Sequence record: OQ473815.1 | DNA: 30,153 bases | Direction: 5' to 3' (one strand) | Part shown: piece after piece, positions 1-30,153 of the stretch | How the letters are laid out: each line of letters begins with the position of its first letter | Position numbering within the stretch: the stretch's first letter is position 1 | Made by a program: the position numbers and the translations under genes | Notes under the pieces: model-generated | The model's database searches: none | What the model was told of the DNA's origin: nothing | The model's input: the letters and a program-made list of their open reading frames with translations, nothing else

Positions 1-77
1 CATCGTCTCCTCCTGAATCATTTTATCACTTGTGAGAATATGTAGCATCGTGGTATTTAAAGCTTTTGGTGACGCGC
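1..77. repeat. Left inverted terminal repeat (inner 77 bp only; truncated by window edge)
   Basis: Reverse complement matches 29324-29400 at 76/77 positions (only mismatch: 63 vs 29338); bases 1-3 (CAT) are the minus-strand ATG of the ITR gene. Confidence 0.95.
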
Positions 78-4120: not shown

Positions 4121-4136
4121 TTTGTTTTGAGTGTAG

Positions 4137-4252
4137 TTATAAAGAGAGTTAATAATAAATGAAAGAAGCTATTTATCAATAGAGCTATTAATAAATGAAA
4201 GAATAAATTAAAGAAGCTATTTATAAAGAGAGTTATTAATAAATGAGAGAAG
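4137..4252. repeat. Degenerate purine-rich direct repeats
   Basis: TTATAAAGAGAGTTAwTAATAAATGArAGAAG at 4137-4168 and 4221-4252 (2 mismatches), third partial copy near 4188-4203; AAAGAAGCTATTTAT twice. Confidence 0.85.
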
Positions 4253-4312
4253 TGGGTATATACTTAAATAGTAATTTTTGGTAAATAATTTCTTTTGAGT
4301 ACACTTTTGTTA

Positions 4313-4501
4313 TAACGTTTTTATTTCTGTTTCGTTTTTAACTTTTTGATTTTGTCTAGTAGAGTAAAGGGGCGGGTAAGTAATAAAATAATTATAAAAG
4401 TAAGAAAATGACTACATATTTAAATAAATGATCACGATAAACACTTTTTTGTAACTTCACTTTTCTCTTAACGTTTTTATTTCTATTTCATTTTTAACTT
4501 T
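4313..4501. repeat. 33-bp T-rich direct repeat, two copies 156 bp apart
   Basis: TAACGTTTTTATTTCTrTTTCrTTTTTAACTTT at 4313-4345 and 4469-4501 (2 mismatches). Confidence 0.85.
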
Positions 4502-4851
4502 ATGTTTCTCTAAACTTATCTAATTTGTAACTTTTTGGCATATTTTATTATTAGATTATAATGCTATTTGTTCAGTAATAATATTACAAAATTTGAAAAA
4601 TTTTTTGTTTAGACTTTTTGAGTGATTTTTTAACAGATAAAGATTCCCTTAAAAAAATATTTCAAAAAATTTTTGATCTTTTTGGATAATAATTCAATAG
4701 GTATAATATTAAGTAGTAATCTTATTGTATTGTTTGTAGTTATTTTTGTTCTATTTTTAATATAATAGTGAGTTTATGATTGCGTTAAAGATATGGATAA
4801 TAACAAAGTTGAGATAAAAATAAGTTGAGAAATGAGAAAAAGGACAAAAAA

Positions 4852-4900
4852 GAGAAAAGTATATAAACGACAAAAGCAAAGAATATAGTAGTGGAAGTAT
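4852..4900 (+). promoter_or_regulatory. Conserved strong (probably early) promoter
   Basis: GAGAAAAG-TATATAAA ... AATATAGTAGTG; TATA begins 41 nt before ATG, same spacing as 7451-7499. Confidence 0.8.
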
Positions 4901-5509
4901 ATGTCAGAGCAGAATCAAGAAACAAATCAACAAAGATATGTTTTGGAAAACGGTTTTTTTATTCTGAGTGACGGGACTAGAGTCCCGGCTATTTCTCTCA
5001 GAAATATATGGAGCCAAATCCATAAAAGCTATGTAGAGTTAAATTACTTATACTCACTGAAAACGCAAAATTTCATAAAGGGAACTATAATTTATAATGA
5101 TGATAATGAGGACAATGACGGATATAACATAGGAATAAGATATAGATTAAGTTTAGGTGATTATATATGGTTCAAAACGAAAATATATAGGAATAGCAAA
5201 GCTATTGATGTTGAAGTATGTGACGCATATCTGAGGATTGATGACCCTGAGGCTTTAATGAGAGATGAATATGCGTCTTATGTCGAAAAAAGGGAATGTG
5301 TTAATTCACTTATTTACTATGAACAAATTAGTAAAATTGTTACCGACAATTTGGTTATCAAGAAGCTTTTGGATATCGCAAAGTCTTATATTGAAACTGA
5401 AAAAGACGATTTTGAAATACCGGAGATAAACTCTAGCGTCAACTACACATGGAGAGATTTTAAACAAGATATACTTTATTTACGACAACCTTATGACATG
5501 TTTGCTTAA
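4901..5509 (+). CDS. Paralogue 1 of uncharacterised ~190-aa family (candidate anti-defence protein)
   Basis: Shares VPAI, LYS..NF.KG, YR..LGDY, ECV.S..Y..QI, FEIP, W.DFKQ.IL.LRQP with the other three copies. Confidence 0.85.
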   Translation: MSEQNQETNQQRYVLENGFFILSDGTRVPAISLRNIWSQIHKSYVELNYLYSLKTQNFIKGTIIYNDDNEDNDGYNIGIRYRLSLGDYIWFKTKIYRNSKAIDVEVCDAYLRIDDPEALMRDEYASYVEKRECVNSLIYYEQISKIVTDNLVIKKLLDIAKSYIETEKDDFEIPEINSSVNYTWRDFKQDILYLRQPYDMFA

Positions 5510-5518
5510 AGTCAAACC

Positions 5519-5540
5519 TTTTTTTTATTTTTCTGTTTTC
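5519..5540 (+). terminator. Oligo-T terminator between convergent genes
   Basis: T8 run and further T tracts right after the 5509 stop. Confidence 0.55.
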
Positions 5541-5659
5541 TATTTTAGCTTTTAATTTTATCAGATAATATGATGATCTAACTATTTTTTAAAAATTAGC
5601 TTTATATTAAAAGACTAAATTAATACAGAAAATTAAGAAAATTATAAATAAAAAAAGAT

Positions 5660-6187
5660 TTAATCTAACTTTCTCAACTCCAATATTGCGTTTTTAATCC
5701 TTTGGTATGGTATGTATTCTTTGTATTCCAAAAAAGGAATTTGAAACTCAAAACTTTCACCCGCTAAAGCTCTCTTTACTATATTGATAATTTTTTGCAA
5801 TATCGGGTTTTCGCTATTCAATTTCCCTATTTCTTCTTTATAAAACACCGATACAGTTTCCTTAATTGTTATATCGTTTATCTTATAATATCTGTTTAAT
5901 ATCTCATCATAATCGTGAAGTTTAAACTCTGTTCTCTGTGCCACAAACCAATAATTCTTATATACACATTGGTATATCACTTTTAACTGTATGTATTCAC
6001 CGAATTGTATTCTATATTTTAATCTATATATTTTATTTTTTTCCTTTCTTATTATGGCATCAACGAAATCCCCCTTATCCTCAGAATAAAGAAGATCTAA
6101 AAAAAATCCGTAAGGATATAAATTAATTGTTGTTTCATAATCTCCCACTTTGGGGATTACGAAACCTTTATAGTGCATGCATTTCAT
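5660..6187 (-). CDS. Paralogue 2 of the ~190-aa family (most divergent)
   Basis: IPKVG, LLYSEDKGDFV, YRIQFGEY, SENPILQKI, FQIP, IKNAILELR; ATG 6187 matches promoter spacing. Confidence 0.82.
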   Translation of the reverse strand: MKCMHYKGFVIPKVGDYETTINLYPYGFFLDLLYSEDKGDFVDAIIRKEKNKIYRLKYRIQFGEYIQLKVIYQCVYKNYWFVAQRTEFKLHDYDEILNRYYKINDITIKETVSVFYKEEIGKLNSENPILQKIINIVKRALAGESFEFQIPFLEYKEYIPYQRIKNAILELRKLD

Positions 6188-6235
6188 TTTTTTCTCACTA
6201 CAATACATTACTTTTTATCTTTATAAGTCTTTTGT
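6188..6235 (-). promoter_or_regulatory. Conserved strong (probably early) promoter
   Basis: Minus strand AAAAGA-CTTATAAA-GATAAAAAGTAATGTATTGTAGTGAGAAAAAA-ATG. Confidence 0.75.
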
Positions 6236-6295
6236 TGTGCTTCAATTTTTAAACATGTTGATAAACTTAAGAATAAAGAAAAAATATAAGTTAAC

Positions 6296-6718
6296 TTACT
6301 GTATCTTTATTCCTTTTTCTTTTAGTTTCTCTATTATGTATTTATCTTCACAACACTCATTAAGATCTTCTTCATAACAATTTTCATTACAGTAATAGAA
6401 ATTTTCAGTGATTTCGTCTATTATTCTGTCAAGCATTTTTAATAATTCTCTTTCTTTCATATTTGTTTTAATATCAACGTCATATGTTGTATCGGGCATA
6501 TATGTTACGCCCTCACTTTGTATATTTTCACTGTACCTTATTGTAATTTCTAATAACGTTTCTTCATTATTTATAATATCTATACTAATATCAAGATCTT
6601 TATTATCTATATTGTATTTAATACTGTTTCTTATTAGTTTTAGAATATGTATAGTTTCTGAGAGTTGTAATACTGTATCTATCGTTATTTGATTTTCTTG
6701 AGTATTCACGTTTTCCAT
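6296..6718 (-). CDS. Acidic protein with C-terminal Cys cluster, 140 aa (candidate anti-defence protein)
   Basis: Own copy of the shared promoter; CNENCYEEDLNECCE motif; ATG 6718 preferred over GTG 6727. Confidence 0.8.
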   Translation of the reverse strand: MENVNTQENQITIDTVLQLSETIHILKLIRNSIKYNIDNKDLDISIDIINNEETLLEITIRYSENIQSEGVTYMPDTTYDVDIKTNMKERELLKMLDRIIDEITENFYYCNENCYEEDLNECCEDKYIIEKLKEKGIKIQ

Positions 6719-6766
6719 TTCTCTCACTATATTATTTTTCTCTTTTGTTACTTTTAAGCTTTTTGC
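6719..6766 (-). promoter_or_regulatory. Conserved strong (probably early) promoter
   Basis: Minus strand GCAAAAAG-CTTAAAAG-TAACAAAAGAGAAAAATAATATAGTGAGAGAA-ATG. Confidence 0.7.
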
Positions 6767-6821
6767 TTATTTCTTTATCTCACAATTGTGAATATAATCG
6801 AATGAAGCGAAAAGTAATAAT

Positions 6822-7388
6822 GTGAAAAAGAGCAAAATAGATTTTTTGATATCCAATAGCGGGTTAAAAGTACCCGCCATAGGTGTCGTTGAATACGATC
6901 AACACATATCTAAAAAATATCTAAAGTTACAATTCCTATACAGTGAAGAGAAAAATGACTTTGTTGAAGGACTAATAAGGAATGGTGAAGTTATTGGTGA
7001 CGTTGACAAAAAGATTAGATTTGATATATTGTATAGAATACCATTAGGCGAATATTTACTATTTGGTATAGAGAGTGCCGGAAACTATGACTATATGGTA
7101 TTTAGCATTTGCAAAATAAGAGTAAATGCCGATAATGTAGAACATTTGATATTTTCTGAGTTTAATGTTAGCGTTGAAAATGAGGAGTGTATAGCTTCTA
7201 ACGTTTATGCAAATCAGTTAGATAAGATAAGTTCTGAAAATAAACTTATTGATAAAATGTTGTATATAGCGAAATTTTACTATTATAATGACGTTGAGTA
7301 TCTTGAGATACCGAAAAATGAAAGCGGAGAGCATTACGAATGGAATGATCTGAAACAGTCTATCCTATACTTGAGACAACCTTTTTAA
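6822..7388 (+). CDS. Paralogue 3 of the ~190-aa family
   Basis: VPAIG, FLYSEEKNDFVEG, YRIPLGEY, ECIAS.VY..QL, LEIP, W.DLKQSILYLRQPF; GTG start; lacks the shared promoter. Confidence 0.85.
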   Translation: MKKSKIDFLISNSGLKVPAIGVVEYDQHISKKYLKLQFLYSEEKNDFVEGLIRNGEVIGDVDKKIRFDILYRIPLGEYLLFGIESAGNYDYMVFSICKIRVNADNVEHLIFSEFNVSVENEECIASNVYANQLDKISSENKLIDKMLYIAKFYYYNDVEYLEIPKNESGEHYEWNDLKQSILYLRQPF

Positions 7389-7450
7389 GCTTAGTTTATT
7401 TTTTTCCCTTTTATTCTTCTTCTTCTTTCGGTTTAACAGTGAAGTGAAAA

Positions 7451-7499
7451 GAGAAAGATATATAAACAATAAAAGAGTAAAGTATTATAGTGATAAGAT
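7451..7499 (+). promoter_or_regulatory. Conserved strong (probably early) promoter
   Basis: GAGAAAGA-TATATAAA-CAATAAAAGAGTAAAGTATTATAGTGATAAGAT-ATG. Confidence 0.8.
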
Positions 7500-8078
7500 A
7501 TGAGTCAACAAACACAACAAAACCAAATAGAAGAAACAGAATTTTTTAATGAATACGATAATTATCTTATTCCTAAAGTGGGGATTCTAGTTAGACAGAA
7601 TAAAATTTATGACGATAACTTTACTGTCTCACTATTGTACTCATTAGACAAAGGCGATTTTGTTAACGGTTACGTTATACCTTTCAAGAATGATGATAGC
7701 ACTATAACCTATAACGTGTTTTATAGAGTTCTATTAAAACAATACGCTCTATTTAATTTATATTATGTTAAACCATACGATTACTATACTGTAGAATTAT
7801 GTCTAATAAACGTGAAGACAGACGATATTAGAGACTTATATATTGATGAGGAAAAAGTTAATTATGAAACTATTGAATGCGTTAGCTCTAGAGTTTACGC
7901 ATATCAACTACATAATATAAAATCGGATAACACAACAATAGAGAAGATATTAGAGTTACTGAGATCTCACACGTTTACTTTTGAAATTCCTCACGTTCAA
8001 CAACCCACTAAAGTGGAATGGCATGATCTCAAGCAATCAGTCCTTAGATTAAGGATACCATTCGATCTAGAAGCTTAA
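7500..8078 (+). CDS. Paralogue 4 of the ~190-aa family
   Basis: IPKVG, LLYSLDKGDFVNG, YRVLLKQY, ECVSS.VY..QL, FEIP, WHDLKQSVLRLR.PF; Gln-rich N-terminus like paralogue 1. Confidence 0.87.
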   Translation: MSQQTQQNQIEETEFFNEYDNYLIPKVGILVRQNKIYDDNFTVSLLYSLDKGDFVNGYVIPFKNDDSTITYNVFYRVLLKQYALFNLYYVKPYDYYTVELCLINVKTDDIRDLYIDEEKVNYETIECVSSRVYAYQLHNIKSDNTTIEKILELLRSHTFTFEIPHVQQPTKVEWHDLKQSVLRLRIPFDLEA

Positions 8079-8110
8079 TTTTTTGTCTAGTCTTCATGAT
8101 GGTGATAGAT

Positions 8111-8458
8111 ATGTCCACACCTCAAGATAAAAAAACAAGAAGTTCCCCCGAATGTGTTTATTTTGAATTCGATCCTTTCAAAATACCTAAAGACGTACAA
8201 AAGGAAATAATTTTTAGTTTTCTTAATAAAAGCCGTGGTAGGGTCAGAGTGAACACAAGTTACGTTACCAATCCTAACGGCGTTTCTGAAGAGATAGCTT
8301 TAGTGAAAATGGTAGTGGGAAGAACTAGTCACTTGTTCGCTTACTTTAGTGCCAGTGCGATGAGAGAAGTGTTAAAGAACGCCGAATACTATCTAGAGAA
8401 AAAAGAGGAATGCGCCGATATCAGTTTTGAAGTGTGGAGAAGAAAGGTTAAAAGTTAA
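8111..8458 (+). CDS. Hypothetical protein, 115 aa
   Basis: ATG 8111 with GGTGA RBS at 8101-8105. Confidence 0.75.
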   Translation: MSTPQDKKTRSSPECVYFEFDPFKIPKDVQKEIIFSFLNKSRGRVRVNTSYVTNPNGVSEEIALVKMVVGRTSHLFAYFSASAMREVLKNAEYYLEKKEECADISFEVWRRKVKS

Positions 8459-8484
8459 CCCTTTTTCTTTAACATAAAAGTAAA

Positions 8485-8534
8485 AGAAAACTTTATAAGG
8501 TTTAAGTACAATAGTAAGATAGAGGTGAAAAAAG
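8485..8534 (+). promoter_or_regulatory. Promoter and RBS of acrIII-1 operon
   Basis: AGAAAAC-TTTATAAG ... ATAGTAAG ... GAGGTGA RBS; looser match to the shared early promoter. Confidence 0.65.
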
Positions 8535-8882
8535 GTGTCAAACCAAAAACAAAAATTGGTTTATTTAAGTAATGCCTTCAGTCCGGGCATGCTTTCAAGC
8601 TACCCCGTGACTGTGAGGATAGAACAAGTTAGCGAAAGCGAGTTCGCTAACGTTGTGAAGAGCGAGAACGTGGTGAACGCTATAGGGCATCAGGGTACTG
8701 TTGACTTCATTAACGCCAAGTTCAACGCCAAACTGATGATGAATAGGATAACGCTGAAGCTAGGGTCAGGTGATGTGCTTTACATAATACAGTTGCTAAC
8801 GCGTTTGCCAGAGGGTAAAGTGCTAACTAGTGAAGAAGTTGCTAACATTAAGAGCGTATACCTAAAGATAACTGTAATGTGA
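8535..8882 (+). CDS. acrIII-1: AcrIII-1 viral ring nuclease (DUF1874), degrades cyclic tetra-adenylate
   Basis: YLSNAFSPGML, IGHQGT (catalytic His), NRITLKL, QLLTRLPEGKVLTSEE match the recalled SIRV1 gp29 family motifs. Confidence 0.93.
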   Translation: MSNQKQKLVYLSNAFSPGMLSSYPVTVRIEQVSESEFANVVKSENVVNAIGHQGTVDFINAKFNAKLMMNRITLKLGSGDVLYIIQLLTRLPEGKVLTSEEVANIKSVYLKITVM

Positions 8883-23716: not shown

Positions 23717-24050
23717 CGTTAATTAGCGCTATGCCCACCTTAACGTCACCGTTCTCGTTACGATAGCCCTTCACGACCATCTTATCGTTAGTGAAGTTCT
23801 TCTCCACCTCAAGTTGAGAGAAGACTACCCTCAACTCCATCTTCTTTATTGGGGGTTGGACGGGCAAAGGTTCACTGTAACATATTATGTCCTCCTTCAC
23901 CTTCTCGCACCTAGCGAACTTCACGTTAGTCTGACCAGTCTGAGCCAACCCGTTAAGGAAAGTGACCATACTGAGCCAATAGACGGGTTGTCCCTCACTC
24001 ATGTCAACGGTTGAGAACATCTTCTTTAATAGGTCCTGATTTACGCTCAT
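23691..24050 (-). CDS. Hypothetical protein, 119 aa
   Basis: ATGA-coupled within the structural operon. Confidence 0.78.
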   Translation of the reverse strand: MSVNQDLLKKMFSTVDMSEGQPVYWLSMVTFLNGLAQTGQTNVKFARCEKVKEDIICYSEPLPVQPPIKKMELRVVFSQLEVEKNFTNDKMVVKGYRNENGDVKVGIALINGEPSESNW

Positions 24051-24316
24051 AAGGCACCACCGTTAACTAATATAAGGAGAGAACCAGTGAACTGGAGGAC
24101 GCCGATCGGATCCTTCATGAAGTTGTTGTACAAAATCTGAACGTAACTTGACGCTAGCTTAAGGTACCTGTATATGTATTCGAAAGCCACCTTAATGTAA
24201 TGCATGAACCTCCTCACGAACTTACCAAGCTCATAGACTATCATGTCAAACGCAGAAGATATGGACGTAGCTATACCGCCTATTCCGTTAGCTACCTGGT
24301 TTATTATACCGGACAT
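24047..24316 (-). CDS. Amphipathic helical protein with C-terminal hydrophobic segment, 89 aa
   Basis: First gene of the minus-strand structural operon. Confidence 0.78.
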   Translation of the reverse strand: MSGIINQVANGIGGIATSISSAFDMIVYELGKFVRRFMHYIKVAFEYIYRYLKLASSYVQILYNNFMKDPIGVLQFTGSLLILVNGGAL

Positions 24317-24398
24317 AAGATATAGTGGTAAGGAGAATTATTATACTTTACTCATGAAGACCAAACATTATTTAAACTAGAGTAAACCACATAATGTT

Positions 24399-24605
24399 AT
24401 GGACTGGGAACTAGAGGAACTAAACGAAGAGGACCGCAAAAAGCTCGAACAACTGATAGAACAAAAGGGTTCCCTCGTTGAGGCTATCTCGTTCTTGCTC
24501 AAGTGTTGTGACGACAAAGAGTACGCGAAACAGATACTTTCCATGATGTTCTCAAACAAACCGTTACTTATGAACTTCTTAAAGACGAACTACAAGGAAC
24601 GGTAA
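24399..24605 (+). CDS. Small helical protein, 68 aa
   Basis: TATTTAAA at 24369-24376 before a leaderless ATG. Confidence 0.75.
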   Translation: MDWELEELNEEDRKKLEQLIEQKGSLVEAISFLLKCCDDKEYAKQILSMMFSNKPLLMNFLKTNYKER

Positions 24606-24889
24606 TTAAGGTATAGCCCCCAAGCCAAGTAGACGAGAAATGGAACTAACCAAAAGGGAGAGAATTGCCTCACAAGGAAATAGACTGAAAGCGAGAGGGA
24701 AGAGAGACACATAGACACTAGAAGGAGAGAGATAGAAACGCCTTGCCTTATTGAAAAGTAGACCTCATAAGCTATCCAAGGTATGAAAAAGAGGTAATAA
24801 GGGTAGTGATAATCACCAGCCATAACTAGAAACATGACTAGGACGAGACCGTAAGCGAACCTCAGCTCATGATTACCATACTTTGGCAT
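24590..24889 (-). CDS. Polytopic membrane protein, 99 aa (about 3 TM)
   Basis: Several long aromatic/hydrophobic segments; AAGGG RBS-like site. Confidence 0.72.
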   Translation of the reverse strand: MPKYGNHELRFAYGLVLVMFLVMAGDYHYPYYLFFIPWIAYEVYFSIRQGVSISLLLVSMCLSSLSLSVYFLVRQFSPFWLVPFLVYLAWGLYLNYRSL

Positions 24890-25161
24890 ACCCTTTTATT
24901 TAATAACTTAGCTATACTTATATTCCTTTTCCTAAGCTCAACCTCAACGTTATGAGGTAACGTAACGTTTACAGTAACGTAAGATGACCCGTTCCTAACC
25001 CAACCTATCGATTTCCTTCCCTTTCTACTACTAACCTTAGGTATGGGTAAACCTAGCTCCTTAGATATCTCCCTCCTTATCACCTCAGGTACTGACGTGT
25101 TGAGTTGGTCAGCCATGCCCTTAAGTTTCAGATATACGTCATACTTGATCGTTACTATCAT
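24862..25161 (-). CDS. Tandem RHH DNA-binding protein, 99 aa
   Basis: MIVTIKYDVYLKLKGMADQLNTSVPEVIRREI and VTVNVTLPHNVEVELRKRNISIAKLL. Confidence 0.8.
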   Translation of the reverse strand: MIVTIKYDVYLKLKGMADQLNTSVPEVIRREISKELGLPIPKVSSRKGRKSIGWVRNGSSYVTVNVTLPHNVEVELRKRNISIAKLLNKRVCQSMVIMS

Positions 25162-25242
25162 ATGTGACTTTATGAAAAACCAAAATAAATACATTTCTAC
25201 ATTAAGACAAAGTTTAAAACCATGTTCAACAGTAACAGTATT

Positions 25243-25659
25243 ATGTATCCACAAGTGTGTGTAACGCCAACTGGTAATACAGTGATCAAGGAAAGTTACG
25301 ATAAGTCTTTCCTGTTCTGTACTGACAACCTGGACGTGTTGGAGGCTTACAAAAAGATAAACAAGTATGACAACCTCACAAAGCTCCAGTTACTCGTTAG
25401 GTTAGCCTTCAATGCGGGTAAGTTCATAAACGTTGAGGGACCCGATCTCACACATAAGGAAAGCATCGCACTACTTTTAGGAAAGGCTTACGCGTCAGGA
25501 CAGAAAATCAAGGTCCACGATAATAACTACACGTATAAGATAGAGGAGATCTCAACGATACCTGAGGTAGAGATGTTCGTCTCATATTGCATAGGTCTAA
25601 TCTTAACTACAAACAAGACGTGTTACGAGTTCGGTTTGGTGAAGGAGGAAAGGAACTGA
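25243..25659 (+). CDS. Hypothetical protein, 138 aa
   Basis: TTTAAAA at 25213-25219; ATG 25243 preferred. Confidence 0.78.
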   Translation: MYPQVCVTPTGNTVIKESYDKSFLFCTDNLDVLEAYKKINKYDNLTKLQLLVRLAFNAGKFINVEGPDLTHKESIALLLGKAYASGQKIKVHDNNYTYKIEEISTIPEVEMFVSYCIGLILTTNKTCYEFGLVKEERN

Positions 25660-25973
25660 TGTTAAGGTGTGGTTACGCAGGGTCAAAGAAGGTGTTGTTC
25701 ATACCTAGGATAATACAAGACCAGTTCAATAAAGGTGACATATACTCAGTTATGGTAAGAGATGGTATAGTATCGCTCAAATGCATATCCGTAGCGGGGA
25801 GACTAGTACTGTACATACCAACAGCGTTAGAGGAGTTGTTTAAGGAGAACGAAAGGTACACGCTAGTCCCTTACGTATATAGGACTTACAACGTCAGATC
25901 CAGTAAGGAGGGCGAACTCACGAAGGGAGAAAACGTGAAAACCGCTAGAGTAAAGCGGATAAAACCTAAATAA
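25659..25973 (+). CDS. Tandem AbrB/SpoVT-like swapped-hairpin DNA-binding protein
   Basis: GSKKVLFIPRIIQDQFNKGD and GRLVLYIPTALEELFKENE repeats; TGATG coupling, GGAGG upstream. Confidence 0.7.
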   Translation: MLRCGYAGSKKVLFIPRIIQDQFNKGDIYSVMVRDGIVSLKCISVAGRLVLYIPTALEELFKENERYTLVPYVYRTYNVRSSKEGELTKGENVKTARVKRIKPK

Positions 25974-26189
25974 GGAGAGTATGAACTCCCTTTCGTCAAT
26001 CTCATCAGATAGGTAACGGTCAATCAGTATCAAGACCTCTTCCTTCCTCTTGCTCCTCACGCTCTCAAACGCTTCACGCAACATGAGGTTCCAAACCACC
26101 ACAAACTGAGCCTTTATCGATTCTCTCACGTACCCCTTAACGTTACCAAAAAACAAAAACGTTAACCTTATGAAGGTTATTAACTTCAA
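25863..26189 (-). CDS. Possible hypothetical protein; start uncertain
   Basis: Fills the gap downstream of 26195-26566 but overlaps the convergent gene by 111 nt; TTG start. Confidence 0.4.
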   Translation of the reverse strand: MKLITFIRLTFLFFGNVKGYVRESIKAQFVVVWNLMLREAFESVRSKRKEEVLILIDRYLSDEIDEREFILSLFRFYPLYSSGFHVFSLREFALLTGSDVVSPIYVRD

Positions 26190-26194
26190 AGAAC

Positions 26195-26566
26195 CTACCC
26201 AAGGATATCCTTCAAGACGTCCTCAGCGTCCTTACTCTCCTTCTTAGTCCACAACTCCACGTAACCTGGCAACATGCTCTTGAAGAGGAGAAGGGTGTTA
26301 TAGAGTGAAGTGACGTTATCGCCGTTCACGTACTCCTTAATAGGTTTGCAGTCATTAAGTGACTTACCAACCATAAGCTTACCGTTCTTTATTATTAAAA
26401 TGTCAAGGTCATTGTTGACGAAGAGGTTTATCTCATGTGAGACGGACGAAGGTATCATCTCCTCGATCGAGTGGACCAGAGATTCCAAGTAGTTACCGTT
26501 TCTCCTAGGTGACTTATCATCTAAAATTTCTCTTAACTGTTTAACCTCATCTTCATGTTCTGGCAT
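26195..26566 (-). CDS. Hypothetical protein, 123 aa
   Basis: ATG start, typical codon use, divergent from the protease operon. Confidence 0.8.
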   Translation of the reverse strand: MPEHEDEVKQLREILDDKSPRRNGNYLESLVHSIEEMIPSSVSHEINLFVNNDLDILIIKNGKLMVGKSLNDCKPIKEYVNGDNVTSLYNTLLLFKSMLPGYVELWTKKESKDAEDVLKDILG

Positions 26567-26658
26567 ATCTGTTCAAGTTACGATTGGATACAGAAAATAA
26601 AAAGATTTTTGTTGTAAAACATAGAAAGGAATATATCTGAGAGGTAAACAATAAACAT

Positions 26659-27486
26659 ATGATAGTCCAAATAAAGGCTTACCACAGGAAAAGGAAGACT
26701 GTGGTGTTTGACGATAAGATACCTGACACGTTGATAGAGGCGGTTTACCCTGGGTACGAAATAGAGAGAGAGGAACAAGGAATGATAGAGGTTGGGTCAA
26801 ACGTTGGATTAACTAAGTTCACCCCATCACTTATCAACCCACCTAACTGGTCAGACTATCACGTGGACGGACTGAAGTTGGTCTCAAACTTCTTCTCAGT
26901 ATCACAGTTCACGTTAAAGCCAAAACAGACCTTGGCAGTAGCCAGTTACGTGTTACCTAAAACCGTTGCGTTAAAGAGGACCGGAAAACCAAACGTCATA
27001 GTTACAGCCTATCACGTAGCTAACATGGGAGTGTTCTCAATAAATGAGACTAACGTTAGCGTACCAGCAGTCATCGTGAAGACAGACAACGCAAGGACGT
27101 CAATAATAAATTATAACCCTACAGTTAGGAAGGTTGAGGAGAGGACGCTAGTGATAAGTATACCAAGGGACATAGGATACCTTGAGTACGATAAGGTAAA
27201 AATAAGTGAAGGTGAGGAGTTGGCGGGTGTGGTGTCAGGTACTGATGGAAATCACGGGTTCGTTGCACCGTACCAGAACTTCTTTATTGAAGGAGAGAAA
27301 CTGGTAGCGTACACCCCATTACGTGGTGAGATCACGTTAACCGTAACTGACGCTAACGTTAGCTATGGGATAGTGACGAGTTACAATAACAGGATCATGT
27401 ACGTGGAAGTGGAGAAAGGAGTGGAAGTTAACAAACCGTTCATGCACGGAGAGAGCGGTAGCCCAGTGTTCAGGAGGTCTGGTTGA
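26659..27486 (+). CDS. Chymotrypsin-like (clan PA/S1) serine protease A
   Basis: VTAYHV (H119), RDIGYL (D171), GESGSPV (S266); ends 9 aa after the Ser. Confidence 0.8.
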   Translation: MIVQIKAYHRKRKTVVFDDKIPDTLIEAVYPGYEIEREEQGMIEVGSNVGLTKFTPSLINPPNWSDYHVDGLKLVSNFFSVSQFTLKPKQTLAVASYVLPKTVALKRTGKPNVIVTAYHVANMGVFSINETNVSVPAVIVKTDNARTSIINYNPTVRKVEERTLVISIPRDIGYLEYDKVKISEGEELAGVVSGTDGNHGFVAPYQNFFIEGEKLVAYTPLRGEITLTVTDANVSYGIVTSYNNRIMYVEVEKGVEVNKPFMHGESGSPVFRRSG

Positions 27487-27489
27487 GAG

Positions 27490-28392
27490 ATGCCAATAAG
27501 GATAGGTTACAAAGTTGACCATAACAATCACCTCATAGTTGTGTTCGACAGTATGATAACTGACGCTTTCATAAACAACTTATACCCAGGATACGACATC
27601 AAGAGGACGATAACGAAAACGTATGACGAACCTAAAGTTAACGACCAGCCTAACGTGGATCCATACTCAGGTAACTACCCAATAACCATGACCGCAATAA
27701 GGAACGTAACCAACCCATGGTTCACCTACCAACAGAACGGATATGAGATATTACAAAGGCACTTCAAGGTTAACACCCTCTTCCTAAATGAAAAGAAGAG
27801 CAAAGGAACGTTAGGTTTCGTACTGAACTCGGTGAGGGCTTTAGAGAGGACTGGGAAAACAAACGTGGCGTTAACCGCATATCACGTTTGCGCGATGCCG
27901 TCATTTGAGAGCATGACTGGGATAGCCATACCAATGAAAAGCGAGAACACGAAACTTAACTTCACCACGTCACCAATAAACAACAGCGTGTCAATAGTCA
28001 AGATAGCGCCCAACACGCTAGTCACGTCAATAGACTCAGACTTGGCAATACTGGAGTACGAGGGTAAACCCTACAACGGAAAGGAGAAGATATTCACAGG
28101 TAACGATTACATAGAGGACTTCAGGATAATAGGTGTGATATCCGCAACGTTCCCTGACGAGAGCGTAATAGCACCTTTCACTAATAACGTTGAGGTAGGA
28201 GATGAGGTAATAATGGGTGGCGTTATGAGCGGAATAAGGAAAGCGAGGGTGAAATCAAAGAACGTTGAGTACGCCCTACTGGACTCAAGGGACCAAAAGA
28301 AGATAATAGTTATGGTGAAGAACGGAATACTCGTTGACAAACCGTCAATACCTGGCGACAGTGGGGGACCCGTAATAAAGAAAACTATTTAA
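27490..28392 (+). CDS. Chymotrypsin-like (clan PA/S1) serine protease B
   Basis: GTLG, LTAYHV (H132), SDLAIL (D184), VGDEVIMGG..SG, PGDSGGPV (S291); ends 9 aa after the Ser. Confidence 0.88.
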   Translation: MPIRIGYKVDHNNHLIVVFDSMITDAFINNLYPGYDIKRTITKTYDEPKVNDQPNVDPYSGNYPITMTAIRNVTNPWFTYQQNGYEILQRHFKVNTLFLNEKKSKGTLGFVLNSVRALERTGKTNVALTAYHVCAMPSFESMTGIAIPMKSENTKLNFTTSPINNSVSIVKIAPNTLVTSIDSDLAILEYEGKPYNGKEKIFTGNDYIEDFRIIGVISATFPDESVIAPFTNNVEVGDEVIMGGVMSGIRKARVKSKNVEYALLDSRDQKKIIVMVKNGILVDKPSIPGDSGGPVIKKTI

Positions 28393-28414
28393 CCTTAAGT
28401 GAATAGGTTAAGGT

Positions 28415-28666
28415 ATGGCAAAAACTATATTCGACTACGTACACCTGATGTACGCGGTAGCGGGAGCGTTGTTTGGAGCGATAGTAGGATACCTAATTGG
28501 GACCGCCCTATACGCCATAACCCTGTCAGCGTCAATATACAACACAACACTGTTGGCACCAATGACACACTCAGCCACAGGATTCCCACTGATATTCGCG
28601 CTAGGTTTCGCAGGGGCAGGCTTCGGGTTCGGAATAATATACTCGTACCAAACAAACTCCCAATAA
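28415..28666 (+). CDS. Two-TM Gly/Ala-rich membrane protein, 83 aa
   Basis: Two hydrophobic helices with GxxxG motifs, NTT sequon in the loop; AGGT RBS; third gene of the protease operon. Confidence 0.8.
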   Translation: MAKTIFDYVHLMYAVAGALFGAIVGYLIGTALYAITLSASIYNTTLLAPMTHSATGFPLIFALGFAGAGFGFGIIYSYQTNSQ

Positions 28667-29266
28667 TCAACTATACTTTTTTATTGTAAATATCTTTCTT
28701 GTTGTAACTGGATAACCGATCTTACCACCGTAAAAGGTGTAAGTCTTAGTTACGTAAGGGTCAAAATAAGGTTTGACCAAGGTACCTAATTGCATGTCAT
28801 AGTTTATGATCTCAAACGGATCGTAGAAAACGAGGAACCAACCAATGCCCTGAACGGTGAGAGGAACAAGCTCGTAAGTCATCTCCTGTAGACCGATGAA
28901 ACCATACTCAGGAACAACAAGCCTCTTACCTGGGGGAACAAGGAAAACGAAAGCTACCTGACCATCAACTAAGGCTAAAGAGTAAACGGGTATGGAATTA
29001 AGGTTCTTCACAAACGAAGAGAGACCGTTAGCTAAGTAAACCTCAGCGTAAGCGTCACCAAAGAGGTAATCAGGGACCTGATAACCTTGAAGAGTGGCAC
29101 CCCTAAGTATTGAAGCGTAAAGGTTAGAACTAGTGGGATTGTCAATTATCCAACGAACTTCACCTTCACTTCCACCAACGTACTCATAAGAGAGGGTAGC
29201 CTGACCCGAACTCGTAGTGTCAGAGAAAACGTAATTCCCAGCCTTAACGTAAGGATGTACTTTCAT
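28667..29266 (-). CDS. Beta-rich hypothetical protein, 199 aa
   Basis: TTTATATA box at 29298-29291 places a leaderless ATG at 29266; stop abuts the stop of the 2-TM gene. Confidence 0.8.
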   Translation of the reverse strand: MKVHPYVKAGNYVFSDTTSSGQATLSYEYVGGSEGEVRWIIDNPTSSNLYASILRGATLQGYQVPDYLFGDAYAEVYLANGLSSFVKNLNSIPVYSLALVDGQVAFVFLVPPGKRLVVPEYGFIGLQEMTYELVPLTVQGIGWFLVFYDPFEIINYDMQLGTLVKPYFDPYVTKTYTFYGGKIGYPVTTRKIFTIKKYS

Positions 29267-29323: not shown

Positions 29324-29397
29324 GCGCGTCACCAAAAACTTTAAATACCACGATGCTACATATTCTCACAAGTGATAAAATGATTCAGGAGGAGACG

Positions 29398-30153
29398 ATG
29401 AAGAGGTTCGTTGCGATGAATGATACCTCAGACGTCTCACTCCCGAATCTCATTCTGATTACGCCTGATGAATTGTCAAATGAATTGAAAGAAAACTTTT
29501 TGAATGCTCCTTTCAGGTGGTTCGTCGTCCACAACACCGAAATGTCGCTCGAGAGTCGCATCGTGGCAAGACGCATCATGTCACAAGATACCAGCATCAC
29601 GTCGCAAGACAACACGTCGCACCAAGTCACGTCGCACGAGAACCACACCAGAACGCACCAGAACCACGTCACACCAAGTCACAACGAAACGCAAGACAAC
29701 GCATCGCACGAGAACCACACCAAGTCGCACCAGAACGCGTCGCACCAAGTCACGTCGCAACGCAACGAAACGCACCAAGTCACGCCACTCAGCACCACGT
29801 CGCACCAGGACCAAGTCACACCGGACCACACCAGCACCAAGTCAGACCACGAAACGCAACCGAAAGATTTAAATATCCGCAATGAGATAGTCAACGTTTC
29901 TTTCTTTCCCACTACTCAACTACTACTACTACTCAAAGGAAATAAGAACCAACCAATCAACCAATCTACCAACATACCAATCTACAAAGATACCAAAAAA
30001 GAAACGTACCAAAACATCAACGAACCAAATAAGAAACGTATCAAAACAGAAACGAATCAAAACAGAAACAAATCTATCTATAATATAATATATAAAAACA
30101 AAAGAAGAACGAACGAATATTATATATATAATAATAACAAAAGAAAACAGAAT
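29398..30153 (+). CDS. ITR-encoded ORF open to window end (at least 252 codons; not in ORF track)
   Basis: TTTAAATA box at 29340-29347, GGAGGAG RBS; MKRFVAMNDTSDVSLPNLILITPDELSNELKENFLNAPFRWFVVHNTEMSLESRIVARRIM then a His/Thr/Gln-rich tail; no stop codon. Confidence 0.6.
   Translation, partial: MKRFVAMNDTSDVSLPNLILITPDELSNELKENFLNAPFRWFVVHNTEMSLESRIVARRIMSQDTSITSQDNTSHQVTSHENHTRTHQNHVTPSHNETQDNASHENHTKSHQNASHQVTSQRNETHQVTPLSTTSHQDQVTPDHTSTKSDHETQPKDLNIRNEIVNVSFFPTTQLLLLLKGNKNQPINQSTNIPIYKDTKKETYQNINEPNKKRIKTETNQNRNKSIYNIIYKNKRRTNEYYIYNNNKRKQN
29580..29870 (+). repeat. Degenerate 5-bp-periodic repeat tract
   Basis: Recurring GTCGC, GTCAC, ACCAA, ACCAG, AACGC, AGAAC units; very T-poor + strand. 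Confidence 0.85.
29940..30153 (+). repeat. A/C-rich low-complexity terminal tract (AACCA/AACAA/AACGA-like; TTGTT-like on minus strand)
   Basis: Seen directly; extreme strand skew. Confidence 0.7.

What the first reader, a model, noticed from the sequence alone, without database searches (positions are those of the whole stretch)
26659..28392. Tandem pair of chymotrypsin-like serine proteases in a filamentous archaeal virus
Seen: two paralogous ORFs, each with a His/Asp/Ser triad in the correct order (TAYHV; DIGYL/DLAIL; GESGSP/GDSGGP). Protease B also has the GTLG and VGDEV..GG..SG motifs of alpha-lytic/Nal1-like S1 proteases. Neither has a signal peptide. Knowledge: lipothrixvirus MCPs are not known to need maturation proteases, and I know of no characterised S1 protease in Ligamenvirales. 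Inference: the pair may process virion, envelope or egress proteins, cleave host defence proteins, or act as a competition toxin. Protein toxins of chronic fuselloviruses are a conceptual precedent, but homology cannot be checked here.
Basis: partly seen in the sequence, partly recalled or inferred. Interest (0 to 1): 0.85.

Follow-up and report, generated by a model that had tools for sequence, protein, structure and literature searches.

The report
Paired serine proteases in archaeal virus
Two adjacent genes of the hot-spring archaeal filamentous virus SIFV3 encode diverged copies of a trypsin/alpha-lytic-like serine protease; related viruses are annotated as carrying this protein in their particles, but no annotation or paper I could search calls it a protease.

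Summary
The window is the SIFV3 genome record (OQ473815). ORF51 (26659-27486, 275 aa) and ORF53 (27490-28392, 300 aa) are real paralogues (30% identity, E 4e-36). They lie in the same frame, separated by TGA-GAG, and both are under purifying selection.

They belong to a tiny family: 16 hits among 1.84 billion representative proteins. Every located member lies on a lipothrixvirus or a lipothrixvirus-like contig. AFV3 ORF267b and AFV9 ORF269 are members and are annotated "virion structural protein".

His and Ser of the triad are invariant in 14 diverse members, and Asp is kept in 13 of 14. The family profile hits streptogrisin B (E 3e-4). An AlphaFold model (pLDDT 89.7) matches rice NAL1 and alpha-lytic-type proteases (Foldseek E 2e-6 to 1e-3).

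Two features are non-canonical. There is an extra N-terminal domain of about 100 aa. The protein also ends 9 residues after the catalytic Ser, and the "Ser214" strand appears to sit before the second barrel. An in-silico permutation test supports this permuted strand order.

Best reading: active, virion-associated S1-like proteases. The substrate is unknown; host envelope at entry or virion maturation are the main candidates. SIFV lacks the family, so it is accessory. I rate this a new variant of a known kind. No biochemistry exists.

The parts
26630..26636 (+). AATATAT, a TATA-box-like element about 26 nt upstream of the ORF51 ATG; candidate archaeal promoter for a near-leaderless ORF51-ORF53-ORF54 transcript
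   Evidence: Read by eye from the sequence. The 92-nt intergenic region 26567-26658 is identical in an independent assembly that is 98.2% identical overall. Not tested; the promoter-scanning tool covers only sigma-70 promoters.
26659..27486 (+). ORF51 (275 aa): the more diverged paralogue of the S1-like protease family. H119 (27013-27015), D171 (27169-27171), S193 of GVVSG (27235-27237, Ser214-like), S266 of GESGS (27454-27456).
   Evidence: Purifying selection: 20 nt differences but only 5 conservative aa changes versus assembly L013. No Pfam hit on its own.
27484..27489 (+). TGA GAG spacer. ORF51 and ORF53 are in the same reading frame, separated by one stop codon and one sense codon. GGTTGAGAG just before the ORF53 ATG resembles a Shine-Dalgarno site.
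   Evidence: The stop codon is present in two independent assemblies, L013 and L014, so it is not a sequencing error. The Shine-Dalgarno reading is by eye only.
27490..28392 (+). ORF53 (300 aa): S1-like serine protease paralogue. H132 (27883-27885), D184 (28039-28041), S291 of GDSGG (28360-28362).
   Evidence: Sixteen nt differences but only 1 aa change versus L013.
27490..27789 (+). N-terminal extra domain of ORF53 (about residues 1-100; 4 strands and 3 helices in the model; invariant W77 at 27718-27720). It precedes the protease barrels and its function is unknown (pro-domain-like, oligomerisation or virion-anchoring).
   Evidence: Secondary structure of the model. W77 is invariant. No sequence match in the PDB.
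28114..28188 (+). Residues 209-233 of ORF53 (EDFRIIGVISATFPDESVIAPFTNN): a beta-hairpin carrying invariant G215 and S218 (28141-28143). Inferred equivalent of the canonical Ser214 strand plus the last barrel strand, here placed before the first strand of barrel 2 (permuted order).
   Evidence: Permutation test versus native and deletion controls (40, 57, 61). Strand count of the model.
28415..28666 (+). ORF54 (83 aa): small protein with two hydrophobic segments, 23 nt downstream on the same strand; likely co-transcribed membrane or envelope protein.
   Evidence: AFV3, AFV6, AFV8, AFV9 and L012 have an unrelated 71-72 aa hydrophobic protein next to their family member. There is no sequence similarity between ORF54 and AFV3 ORF71.
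28677..28682 (+). TTTTTT run 11 nt after the ORF54 stop codon; candidate archaeal terminator at the end of the ORF51-53-54 unit.
   Evidence: Read by eye; not tested.

Best explanation
ORF51 and ORF53 are two old, in-frame tandem paralogues of a small family found here only in lipothrixviruses and lipothrixvirus-like contigs (AFV3 ORF267b / AFV9 ORF269 / PHROG 18698). The family adopts a chymotrypsin-type double beta-barrel closest to the streptogrisin/alpha-lytic (S1E) proteases and rice NAL1, and keeps an intact His-Asp-Ser triad. I therefore read both as catalytically active serine endopeptidases. They are made in the cytoplasm without a signal peptide, probably from one ORF51-ORF53-ORF54 transcript. 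Like their AFV3 and AFV9 homologues, they are probably incorporated into the enveloped virion. Each protein has an extra N-terminal domain of about 100 aa. Each also has a rearranged C-terminal barrel: the Ser214-type substrate-binding strand and the last strand precede the rest of the barrel, and the chain ends 9 residues after the nucleophile. The substrate is not known. My preferred mechanism is that the virion-borne enzymes cut host cell-envelope proteins (S-layer or pili) or virion surface proteins during adsorption and entry, with the paralogues differing in specificity. Shown: gene structure, paralogy, family membership, conservation of the triad residues, S1 homology by profile and by predicted fold, purifying selection, and accessory distribution. 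Inferred: catalytic activity, virion incorporation in SIFV3, the permuted topology (about 70% sure) and the entry-related substrate (about 30% sure).
For: Paralogy: E 4e-36. Family: only 16 proteins at E<=1e-3 among 1.84e9 representatives. Every member whose contig carries informative genes lies on a lipothrixvirus genome or a contig with lipothrixvirus MCP or glycosyltransferase genes. Annotation: homologues in AFV3, AFV6, AFV8 and AFV9 are annotated virion (viral) structural protein, and PHROG 18698 'virion structural protein' matches at E 1e-12. Conservation: H132, S291, G289, G292, G215 and S218 are invariant and D184 is kept in 13 of 14 members, at 15-33% pairwise identity. The triad is also kept in all three paralogues of contig L012. 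Sequence homology: the profile hits streptogrisin B at E 3.2e-4, SGPA at 0.023 and the S. fradiae protease at 0.049. Residue mapping: H132 to His57; D184 to Asp102, S291 to Ser195 and S218 to Ser214. Structure: the AF2 model has pLDDT 89.7 and pTM 0.90. Foldseek gives NAL1 at E 2e-6 and NAPase, Lysobacter L1/L5, alpha-lytic protease and SGPB at 1e-4 to 5e-3, all probability 1.00. Permutation test: moving the GVISA hairpin to the C-terminus raises the SGPB score to 29.2 bits (E 5e-6; 115 PDB hits at E<=10, overwhelmingly S1-type proteases). The native order gives 23.4 bits and 9 hits; a deletion-only control gives 21.6 bits and 9 hits. The same move raises Pfam Trypsin matches from 1 to 8 of 14 members, and ORF53 reaches 24.2 bits, above the 20.6 gathering cut-off. 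Selection: ORF53 shows 16 nt differences and 1 aa change, ORF51 shows 20 nt differences and 5 aa changes, against a 98% identical independent assembly that keeps the TGA between them. Accessory, multi-copy and fast-diverging: absent from SIFV even with an unfiltered HMM search, no AFV7 record among the tblastn hits, and 1-3 copies per genome. This pattern is more typical of host-interaction proteins than of core morphogenesis enzymes. The nearest solved relatives include alpha-lytic protease and the Lysobacter L1/L5 enzymes (L1 is deposited as a 'lytic endopeptidase'). From general knowledge, these are extracellular, cell-wall-lytic and kinetically very stable enzymes.
Against: No biochemical or proteomic data exist for SIFV3. 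The SIFV3 paper does not mention these genes. Virion association is transferred from database annotations of 24-29% identical homologues, and I could not read the primary AFV3 and AFV9 papers. Single-sequence Pfam scores are below the curated cut-offs, and ORF51 has no hit at all. Foldseek TM-scores are modest (0.3-0.5) with large rmsd. I had no access to model coordinates, so triad geometry and the packing of the 211-229 hairpin were not measured. In native order HMMER offers an alternative alignment, GVISA to a barrel-1 strand of SGPB, only about 6 bits worse than the permuted solution. ORF51 has GESGS instead of GDSGG, and AFV9 has Glu for the triad Asp. With no signal peptide or TM segment it is unclear how the enzyme would reach the outside of the envelope. 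In SIFV3 the genes lie about 15 kb from the MCP genes, unlike in the AFVs.
Confidence: 0.55

Rival explanations
1. Virion maturation or autoprocessing protease. The enzymes are packaged or act during cytoplasmic assembly to trim virion proteins (terminal claw proteins, envelope proteins or minor capsid proteins). Alternatively they only remove their own N-terminal domain of about 100 aa, as S1E pro-enzymes do, and then stay in the particle as passengers or structural components.
For: The virion structural annotation of homologues. Packaged maturation proteases are common in viruses (general knowledge). An N-terminal extra domain sits where S1E enzymes carry a pro-region. ORF47 nearby is a homologue of another 'virion structural protein' family. 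The Foldseek-similar PFV1 VP3 entry is 230 aa, while the virion protein is described as 18 kDa (PMC12662031). That would fit processing, but it is an inference.
Against: SIFV has related MCP and glycosyltransferase genes in the syntenic region but has no family member, and no AFV7 record was among the tblastn hits. The enzyme therefore cannot be required for core capsid maturation. Copy number varies from 1 to 3. I know of no evidence for processed lipothrixvirus MCPs. The N-terminal domain has no detectable similarity to known pro-regions.
Confidence: 0.22
2. Non-catalytic structural protein. The protease fold has been exapted as a matrix, sheath or envelope-associated building block, like the VP3 sheath protein of tristromaviruses. 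The triad residues would be kept for structural reasons or for a single cis-cleavage, as in the alphavirus capsid protein.
For: Homologues are annotated only as structural proteins. Foldseek links the model to PFV1 structural protein VP3 (E 3e-4) and to a TTV1 20.2 kDa protein (E 2e-3). VP3 is an abundant sheath or membrane-associated protein (PMC12662031; PMC7189273). The topology is non-canonical and lacks the usual C-terminal strands. ORF51 has GESGS and AFV9 has Glu for Asp.
Against: The most conserved columns of the whole family are exactly the catalytic ones: TA[YW]H, D[VIL][AG] and G[DE]SG, plus the Ser214-like GV[IV]S. They are kept across 15-30% identity and across three paralogues in one genome. 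Pseudo-proteases normally lose at least one triad residue (general knowledge). The VP3 link is a low-TM structural hit (0.38/0.47), and I could not inspect the sequence.
Confidence: 0.13
3. Intracellular effector. The proteases act in the infected cytoplasm on host proteins (defence systems, ESCRT or cell-division proteins, transcription factors), or act as a competition toxin.
For: No signal peptide or TM segment. No cysteines are available for disulfides: 0 in ORF51 and 1 in ORF53, which fits folding in the cytoplasm. The top structural hit, NAL1, is an intracellular regulatory protease that degrades specific regulators inside a hexameric cage (PMC12012508). The accessory, fast-evolving and multi-copy pattern also fits counter-defence genes.
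Against: No similarity to any PADLOC defence-related model. Homologues are reported in virions. The genes are not in the terminal regions, which from general knowledge are where lipothrixvirus and rudivirus anti-defence genes cluster; in the AFVs they sit among MCP and glycosyltransferase genes. There is no precedent or direct evidence for toxin activity.
Confidence: 0.08

Closest known systems
Streptogrisin A/B, alpha-lytic protease, NAPase, Lysobacter L1/L5 (MEROPS S1, subfamily S1E; PA clan)
   Same: These are the best sequence-profile hits (SGPB E 3.2e-4 native, 5e-6 after permutation) and they also score by Foldseek (E 1e-4 to 5e-3, probability 1.00). Shared features: the His57, Asp102, Ser195 and Ser214 equivalents; the GDSGG motif; 'VG..V...G..sG...G.V...n..v.y' in barrel 2; a compact catalytic region of about 190 aa; and an N-terminal extension where S1E enzymes have a pro-region.
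   Different: No signal peptide and no disulfide cysteines. The strand order of barrel 2 is permuted and the chain ends 9 residues after Ser195. The N-terminal domain is unrelated in sequence to known pro-regions. Native-order Pfam scores are below the gathering cut-off. The proteins are encoded by an archaeal virus and are annotated as virion components.
Rice NARROW LEAF 1 (NAL1) serine protease (PDB 8HAU, 8PML, 7Y77)
   Same: Top Foldseek hits (E 2e-6, about 350 aligned columns). Both are cytoplasmic trypsin-like proteases without a signal peptide. In both, an N-terminal beta-rich domain precedes the protease domain (NAL1 NTD and ATP-binding domain; PMC12012508).
   Different: 15% identity, TM 0.33-0.38, rmsd 10-15 A. 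No sequence-profile hit to NAL1. NAL1 has the canonical order, with about 70 residues after Ser385. ATP binding and the hexameric cage were not testable here.
AFV3 ORF267b (gp43), AFV6 and AFV8 orthologues, AFV9 ORF269 (gp40); PHROG 18698 'virion structural protein'
   Same: True family members: tblastn E 3e-11 to 8e-3, PHROG E 1e-12, BFVD Foldseek E 6.6e-18 with TM 0.68/0.75. They share the same length class, N-terminal domain, triad, GVISA hairpin and short C-terminus.
   Different: 23-29% identity. The AFVs have a single copy placed between glycosyltransferase and MCP genes. SIFV3 has a tandem pair near the right genome end, with an insertion of about 11 residues (helix 114-121) before the His strand. 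None of these proteins has been annotated as a protease.
Alphavirus capsid protein (togavirin, MEROPS S3) (from general knowledge; not fetched)
   Same: It is a precedent for a virion structural protein that is also a chymotrypsin-fold serine protease.
   Different: Togavirin cleaves itself once out of a polyprotein and is then auto-inhibited by its own C-terminus. The SIFV3 genes are separate ORFs with a conserved stop codon between them. There is no detectable sequence relationship.
Tristromavirus VP3 sheath protein (PFV1 A0A140F3K9) and TTV1 20.2 kDa protein
   Same: Foldseek hits from the ORF53 model (E 3e-4 and 2e-3). Both are virion proteins of enveloped filamentous archaeal viruses. VP3 is associated with the membrane or sheath.
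   Different: Low TM (0.38/0.47) and 10-13% identity. The sequences were not retrievable here, so presence of a triad and true homology are untested.

Membership tests
PA-clan / MEROPS S1 chymotrypsin-like serine peptidases | Two six-stranded beta-barrels (chymotrypsin fold) | tested here: met
   The AF2 model (pLDDT 89.7, pTM 0.90) has about 7 plus 6-7 strands after residue 104. All 36 Foldseek PDB hits with E<=1e-3 are S1 proteases, at probability 0.99-1.00. TM-scores are only 0.3-0.5.
PA-clan / MEROPS S1 chymotrypsin-like serine peptidases | Catalytic triad in the order His, Asp, Ser, with TAxH, D[IVL][AG] and GDSGG contexts | tested here: met
   H132 and S291 are invariant and D184 is kept in 13 of 14 members. 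HMMER maps them to His57 and to Asp102 and Ser195 of streptogrisins. ORF51 has H119, D171 and S266, with GESGS.
PA-clan / MEROPS S1 chymotrypsin-like serine peptidases | Triad residues within hydrogen-bonding distance in three dimensions; oxyanion hole formed | not testable with these tools
   Model coordinates are not exposed. Only the secondary structure and fold-search scores are available.
PA-clan / MEROPS S1 chymotrypsin-like serine peptidases | Canonical strand order, with the Ser214 strand and last barrel strand (plus C-terminal helix) following Ser195 | tested here: not met
   The protein ends 9 residues after S291, with one strand after it. The invariant GV[IV]S hairpin lies upstream at 211-229. 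Moving it to the C-terminus raises the SGPB score from 23.4 to 29.2 bits and Pfam Trypsin matches from 1 to 8 of 14 members. Deleting it gives 21.6 bits and 1 member.
PA-clan / MEROPS S1 chymotrypsin-like serine peptidases | Score above the Pfam Trypsin (PF00089) or Trypsin_2 gathering threshold | tested here: not met
   Native ORF53 scores 14.9 bits (cut-off 20.6) and 14.6 bits (cut-off 27.6). ORF51 has no hit. ORF53 passes PF00089 only after in-silico permutation (24.2 bits).
PA-clan / MEROPS S1 chymotrypsin-like serine peptidases | Peptidase activity dependent on the nucleophilic Ser | not testable with these tools
   This needs expression of wild type versus S266A and S291A, and activity or probe assays.
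Subfamily S1E (streptogrisin / alpha-lytic) | Secreted pre-pro-enzyme: signal peptide, N-terminal pro-region acting as foldase, conserved disulfides | tested here: not met
   No signal peptide or TM segment. ORF51 has 0 Cys and ORF53 has 1. The N-terminal domain of about 100 aa has no similarity to any PDB chain, so a pro-region role is undecided.
Lipothrixvirus AFV3-ORF267b family (PHROG 18698) | Significant full-length sequence homology to AFV3, AFV6, AFV8 and AFV9 members | tested here: met
   PHROG E 1.1e-12. tblastn E 3e-11 over 98% of ORF53. The family HMM scores ORF53 at 267 bits and ORF51 at 227 bits. ORF51 alone finds only itself by tblastn and is linked to the family through ORF53 and the profile.
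Lipothrixvirus AFV3-ORF267b family (PHROG 18698) | Physical presence in purified virions | not testable with these tools
   Only annotations are available: 'virion structural protein' in RefSeq for AFV3, AFV6, AFV8 and AFV9, and 'viral structural protein' in the AFV9 GenBank record. The primary papers are not held. No virion proteomics is reported for SIFV3.
Lipothrixvirus AFV3-ORF267b family (PHROG 18698) | Position in the MCP/glycosyltransferase module, next to a 71-72 aa hydrophobic protein | tested here: inconclusive
   This holds for AFV3, AFV6, AFV8, AFV9 and L012. In SIFV3 the pair lies about 15 kb from the MCP genes. It is followed by an unrelated 83-aa protein with two hydrophobic segments.
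NAL1-like proteases | N-terminal domain plus ATP-binding domain plus protease domain, assembling into a hexameric cage | not tested
   NAL1 is the top Foldseek hit, but no residue-level alignment or oligomer prediction was available. There is no sequence-profile hit to NAL1.
Tristromavirus VP3 sheath protein | Homology to PFV1/PFV2 VP3 | tested here: inconclusive
   Foldseek E 3.1e-4, TM 0.38/0.47. The sequences were not retrievable.

The most novel reading that the evidence does not exclude
The AFV3-ORF267b/SIFV3-ORF51/53 family could be a previously unrecognised class of virion-borne serine proteases with a permuted barrel and high kinetic stability. Enveloped filamentous archaeal viruses would use them to cut through the proteinaceous S-layer or pili at entry, making them the archaeal-virus counterpart of phage virion-associated cell-wall hydrolases. 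The family could also be homologous to the VP3 sheath protein of tristromaviruses. That would add a third shared virion protein linking Lipothrixviridae and Tristromaviridae, and would show a protease being exapted into a matrix protein.
Probability: 0.15. Interest if true: 0.8.

Novelty: new variant of a known kind. Interest (0 to 1): 0.6.

Why it matters
How enveloped filamentous archaeal viruses cross the S-layer, and whether their particles carry enzymes, are open questions. Most lipothrixvirus genes have no assigned function. This work assigns a testable enzymatic function, with clear Ser-to-Ala controls, to a protein annotated as a virion component in AFV3 and AFV9. That gives a direct experimental handle on entry or maturation. 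The apparent permutation of the second beta-barrel, in a protease fold I know only in its canonical strand order, would also interest protein-evolution and thermostable-enzyme researchers. The enzymes come from a virus infecting a thermoacidophilic Saccharolobus from an acidic hot spring and have no disulfides. The weak structural link to tristromavirus VP3, if confirmed, bears on the deep relationships within Adnaviria.

Tried and rejected
1. Single-sequence Pfam, NCBIfam and PADLOC scans. Pfam gave only sub-threshold Trypsin hits for ORF53 and nothing for ORF51. NCBIfam and PADLOC gave nothing.

2. Single-sequence phmmer of ORF53 against PDB sequences gave 0 hits. A 6-sequence profile gave only E about 0.7-0.9.

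3. The first AlphaFold run, with a 6-sequence alignment, gave pLDDT 45.5 and was discarded.

4. The word-indexed protein searches recovered almost nothing. One hit, P0002, is a chimera of the first 42 residues of ORF53 fused to an MFS transporter in a Thermoplasmatales MAG. This is most likely an assembly artefact.

5. The apparent deletion in ORF51 in the older record OP999015.1 is a run of 100 N replacing window 27114-27304. It is not biology.

6. I considered the idea that ORF51 and ORF53 are one gene broken by a sequencing error, or are joined by read-through. The TGA is conserved in two independent assemblies that are about 98% identical. Nothing supports read-through, and the proteins were analysed separately.

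7. The N-terminal 100-aa profile against the PDB gave no meaningful hit.

8. I tried to fetch PFV1, PFV2 and TTV1 records to test the VP3 link. The accessions are not in the collection.

9. I tried to read the AFV3 (PMC2224351), PFV1 (PMC4780613) and Virus Research review (PMC5801132) papers. None is held.

10. An alternative catalytic Asp (D222/E223 in 'FPDES', suggested by the native-order HMMER alignment) was rejected. That position is not conserved, and D184 aligns to Asp102 once the hairpin is moved or removed.

11. Annotated ORF52 (26573-26800, minus strand), which overlaps the ORF51 start, was treated as spurious. The overlapped ORF51 is a conserved family member under purifying selection, and ORF52 was not examined further.
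Full report
IDENTITY OF THE WINDOW. The 30,153-nt window is identical to GenBank OQ473815.1. [quoted passage not shown] SIFV3 is an enveloped, roughly 927-nm filamentous virus with claw-like ends, isolated from a Tengchong acidic hot spring (PMC10101205). The paper places it in Lipothrixviridae and says nothing about proteases. ORF51 and ORF53 are annotated as hypothetical proteins.

OBSERVATION. Both ORFs exist exactly as described: 26659-27486 (275 aa) and 27490-28392 (300 aa). They are paralogues with 30% identity over nearly their full length, E 4e-36. ORF51 has H119, D171 and S266. ORF53 has H132, D184 and S291, plus GTLGF and VGDEV..GG..SG. Neither protein has a signal peptide or a TM segment. 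ORF51 has no cysteine and ORF53 has one.

GENE ARCHITECTURE. The two ORFs are in the same reading frame, separated only by TGA GAG. Two independent metagenome or read-archive assemblies, 98.2% and 98.9% identical, keep this stop codon. The two-gene architecture is therefore real. Against the 98.2% assembly, ORF53 has 16 nucleotide differences but one amino-acid change. ORF51 has 20 differences and five conservative changes. Both genes are under purifying selection.

OPERON SIGNALS. An AATATAT element lies about 26 nt upstream of the ORF51 ATG. A T6 run follows ORF54, an 83-aa protein with two hydrophobic segments that starts 23 nt downstream of ORF53. Together these suggest one ORF51-ORF53-ORF54 transcription unit. 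This was read by eye and not tested.

THE FAMILY. An exhaustive HMMER profile search of 1.84 billion representative proteins found only 16 proteins at E<=1e-3. Among cultured viruses, tblastn finds homologues only in AFV3 (ORF267b/gp43), AFV6, AFV8 and AFV9 (ORF269/gp40). RefSeq labels all four 'virion structural protein', and the AFV9 GenBank record says 'viral structural protein'. ORF53 also matches PHROG 18698 'virion structural protein' at E 1e-12.

GENOMIC CONTEXT OF FAMILY MEMBERS. The metagenomic members I could place lie on contigs with lipothrixvirus MCP (PF25654, PF21660) and/or glycosyltransferase genes; a fourth contig (L011, 1.1 kb) carries no informative neighbours. SIFV, the best-studied betalipothrixvirus, has no member even in an unfiltered HMM search of all six frames. 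One metagenomic contig (L012) has three paralogues. A maximum-likelihood tree puts ORF53, ORF51 and one metagenomic protein in one clade (support 94/93) with long branches. The SIFV3 pair is therefore an old duplication, not a recent one. Overall the family is accessory, variable in copy number and fast-evolving.

CONSERVATION. In a 14-member alignment with mean column identity of 31%, the invariant positions are W77, H132, P148, G215, S218, G248, G289, S291 and G292. D184, G204 and D290 are nearly invariant. In other words, the best-conserved columns are the TA[YW]H, D[VIL][AG] and G[DE]SGG motifs and a GV[IV]S motif. AFV9 has Glu for the Asp, and ORF51 has GESGS. All three L012 paralogues keep His, Asp and Ser.

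HOMOLOGY TO S1 PROTEASES. Single-sequence Pfam scores are sub-threshold: ORF53 gives Trypsin E 0.024 and Trypsin_2 E 0.055, and ORF51 gives nothing. The 14-sequence profile hits streptogrisin B (E 3.2e-4), streptogrisin A (0.023) and the S. fradiae protease (0.049) among 177,635 PDB sequences.

PREDICTED STRUCTURE. AlphaFold2 with the 14-sequence alignment gave a confident model, with pLDDT 89.7 and pTM 0.90. An earlier 6-sequence run was useless, with pLDDT 45.5. Foldseek against the PDB returns only S1 proteases at E<=1e-3. These are rice NAL1 (E 2e-6), NAPase (1.2e-4), Lysobacter L5 and L1, the S. fradiae protease, alpha-lytic protease and SGPB, all at probability 0.99-1.00. TM-scores are modest (0.3-0.5). 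HMMER alignments map H132 to His57, and D184 to Asp102 and S291 to Ser195.

NON-CANONICAL ANATOMY. Two features depart from a standard S1 domain.

(i) Residues 1 to about 100 form an extra domain of four strands and three helices. It has no detectable sequence relative in the PDB.

(ii) The chain ends nine residues after the catalytic Ser, with one strand after it. In ordinary S1 enzymes about 50 residues follow, including the Ser214-Trp215-Gly216 substrate-binding strand and the last barrel strand. The family instead has an invariant G-V-[IV]-S hairpin (ORF53 211-229) between the Asp strand and the first strand of barrel 2.

PERMUTATION TEST. I tested whether this hairpin is the displaced Ser214 strand. 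The aligned segment was moved to the C-terminus in all 14 sequences, for search purposes only.
- Against PDB sequences, the SGPB score rose from 23.4 bits (E 3.2e-4, 9 hits) to 29.2 bits (E 5.2e-6). There were 115 hits at E<=10, overwhelmingly S1-type proteases. The alignment now runs Asp102 ... GDSGG ... 'AIGLTSGG' against 'iyGVvSa'.
- A deletion-only control gave 21.6 bits and 9 hits.
- In Pfam, members matching PF00089 went from 1 (native) and 1 (deletion) to 8 of 14 (permuted). ORF53 then passed the gathering threshold, 24.2 versus 20.6 bits.
- The model has enough strands for two complete barrels only if the hairpin belongs to barrel 2.

I therefore infer a domain-level circular permutation of the second barrel, at about 70% confidence. 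I could not inspect coordinates. Native-order HMMER offers a weaker alternative alignment of the hairpin to a barrel-1 strand. A limited literature search found no report of a permuted chymotrypsin fold.

LINKS TO OTHER VIRAL PROTEINS. Foldseek against predicted viral structures gives the AFV6 orthologue (E 6.6e-18, TM 0.68/0.75). It then gives an unnamed 318-aa protein (5e-6), PFV1 structural protein VP3 (3e-4), another unnamed protein, and a TTV1 20.2-kDa protein (2e-3). VP3 is the sheath, or membrane-associated, protein of tristromaviruses. This is a lead only. TM-scores are low and I could not retrieve the sequences.

FUNCTION. Shown: these are real, selected genes of a lipothrixvirus-specific family with an S1-type fold and a conserved triad, and homologues are annotated as virion proteins. 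Inferred: they are active endopeptidases carried in the SIFV3 particle.

The accessory distribution (absent from SIFV), the variable copy number and the fast divergence argue against an essential capsid-maturation enzyme. They fit a host-interaction role better. From general knowledge, the nearest solved relatives include extracellular, cell-wall-lytic, kinetically stable enzymes. My preferred mechanism, at about 0.3, is cleavage of host envelope proteins (S-layer or pili) or virion surface proteins at entry.

The alternatives are:
- a maturation or autoprocessing protease (0.22);
- a non-catalytic structural protein with a protease fold, like VP3 or a single-turnover alphavirus-capsid-type enzyme (0.13);
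- a cytoplasmic effector against host proteins (0.08), a role for which no PADLOC similarity was found.

LITERATURE. Four full-text searches pairing lipothrixvirus or archaeal-virus terms with protease terms returned nothing that describes such an enzyme. Subscription papers, including the AFV3 and AFV9 descriptions, could not be read.

VERDICT. The finding is real and correctly interpreted at the level of fold and family. It is a new variant of a known kind: an S1/PA-clan protease with a permuted barrel and an extra domain, in a family so far labelled only 'virion structural protein'. The functional proposals remain hypotheses. Interest 0.6.

Noticed in passing
window 1-77 and 29324-29400; 29401-30153: A 77-nt, 99% complementary inverted repeat pairs the left end with a site 753 nt inside the right end. 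Beyond it the record continues with C/A-rich degenerate tandem repeats (periods 16, 32, 36 and 71), which are annotated as the partial ORF56. The older record OP999015.1 ends exactly at the repeat (window position 29400). The true right terminus and terminal inverted repeat structure of SIFV3 may differ from the deposited record.
   Followed up: partly
OP999015.1 (L002) 26693-26792 versus window 27114-27304: The earlier SIFV3 record has 100 N in place of 191 nt inside ORF51. This explains why ORF51 is not annotated there. It is an assembly gap, not a deletion.
   Followed up: yes
L012 (JGI 3300045872 Ga0496375_000553) 3395-4369 (+), 7145-7990 (-), 8046-8849 (+): An uncultured lipothrixvirus-like contig carries three paralogues of the protease family, all with His, Asp and Ser. 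They sit next to ThyX, a dUTPase/dCTP-deaminase-like gene, a glycosyltransferase and both MCP genes.
   Followed up: partly
P0002 (NCBI MAG, Thermoplasmatales archaeon, 190 aa): This protein's first 42 residues are identical to ORF53 and are fused to an MFS-transporter-like sequence. It is most likely a chimeric assembly in a MAG. Alternatively it could be a trace of virus-host DNA joining.
   Followed up: no
L013 (ENA ERZ1758400, scaffold named 'HuN_forest_Scaff6454631'): A 4.5-kb contig 98.2% identical to window 24050-28522 occurs in an assembly whose scaffold name suggests a forest sample. This is an odd source for a virus of a thermoacidophile. Possible explanations are sample naming, cross-contamination or a geothermal soil.
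   Followed up: no
window 26573-26800 (-), annotated SSRV2_ORF52: A 75-aa ORF is annotated on the opposite strand, overlapping the promoter region and the first 142 nt of ORF51. It is probably a spurious call.
   Followed up: no
window 25222-25659 (+), ORF47: This ORF matches PHROG 14289 'virion structural protein' (E 2e-8). The right-hand part of the genome therefore holds at least one more homologue of a lipothrixvirus virion protein that is annotated only as hypothetical.
   Followed up: no
window about 4000-8000: This stretch has markedly low G+C (24-29%, versus about 40-46% elsewhere). It includes a gene-poor gap at 4180-4900.
   Followed up: no
BFVD hits A0A140F3K9 (PFV1 VP3) and P19300 (TTV1 20.2 kDa): The ORF53 model gives weak but high-probability Foldseek matches to tristromavirus virion and uncharacterised proteins. 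The PFV1 VP3 entry is 230 aa, while the virion protein is reported as 18 kDa.
   Followed up: partly
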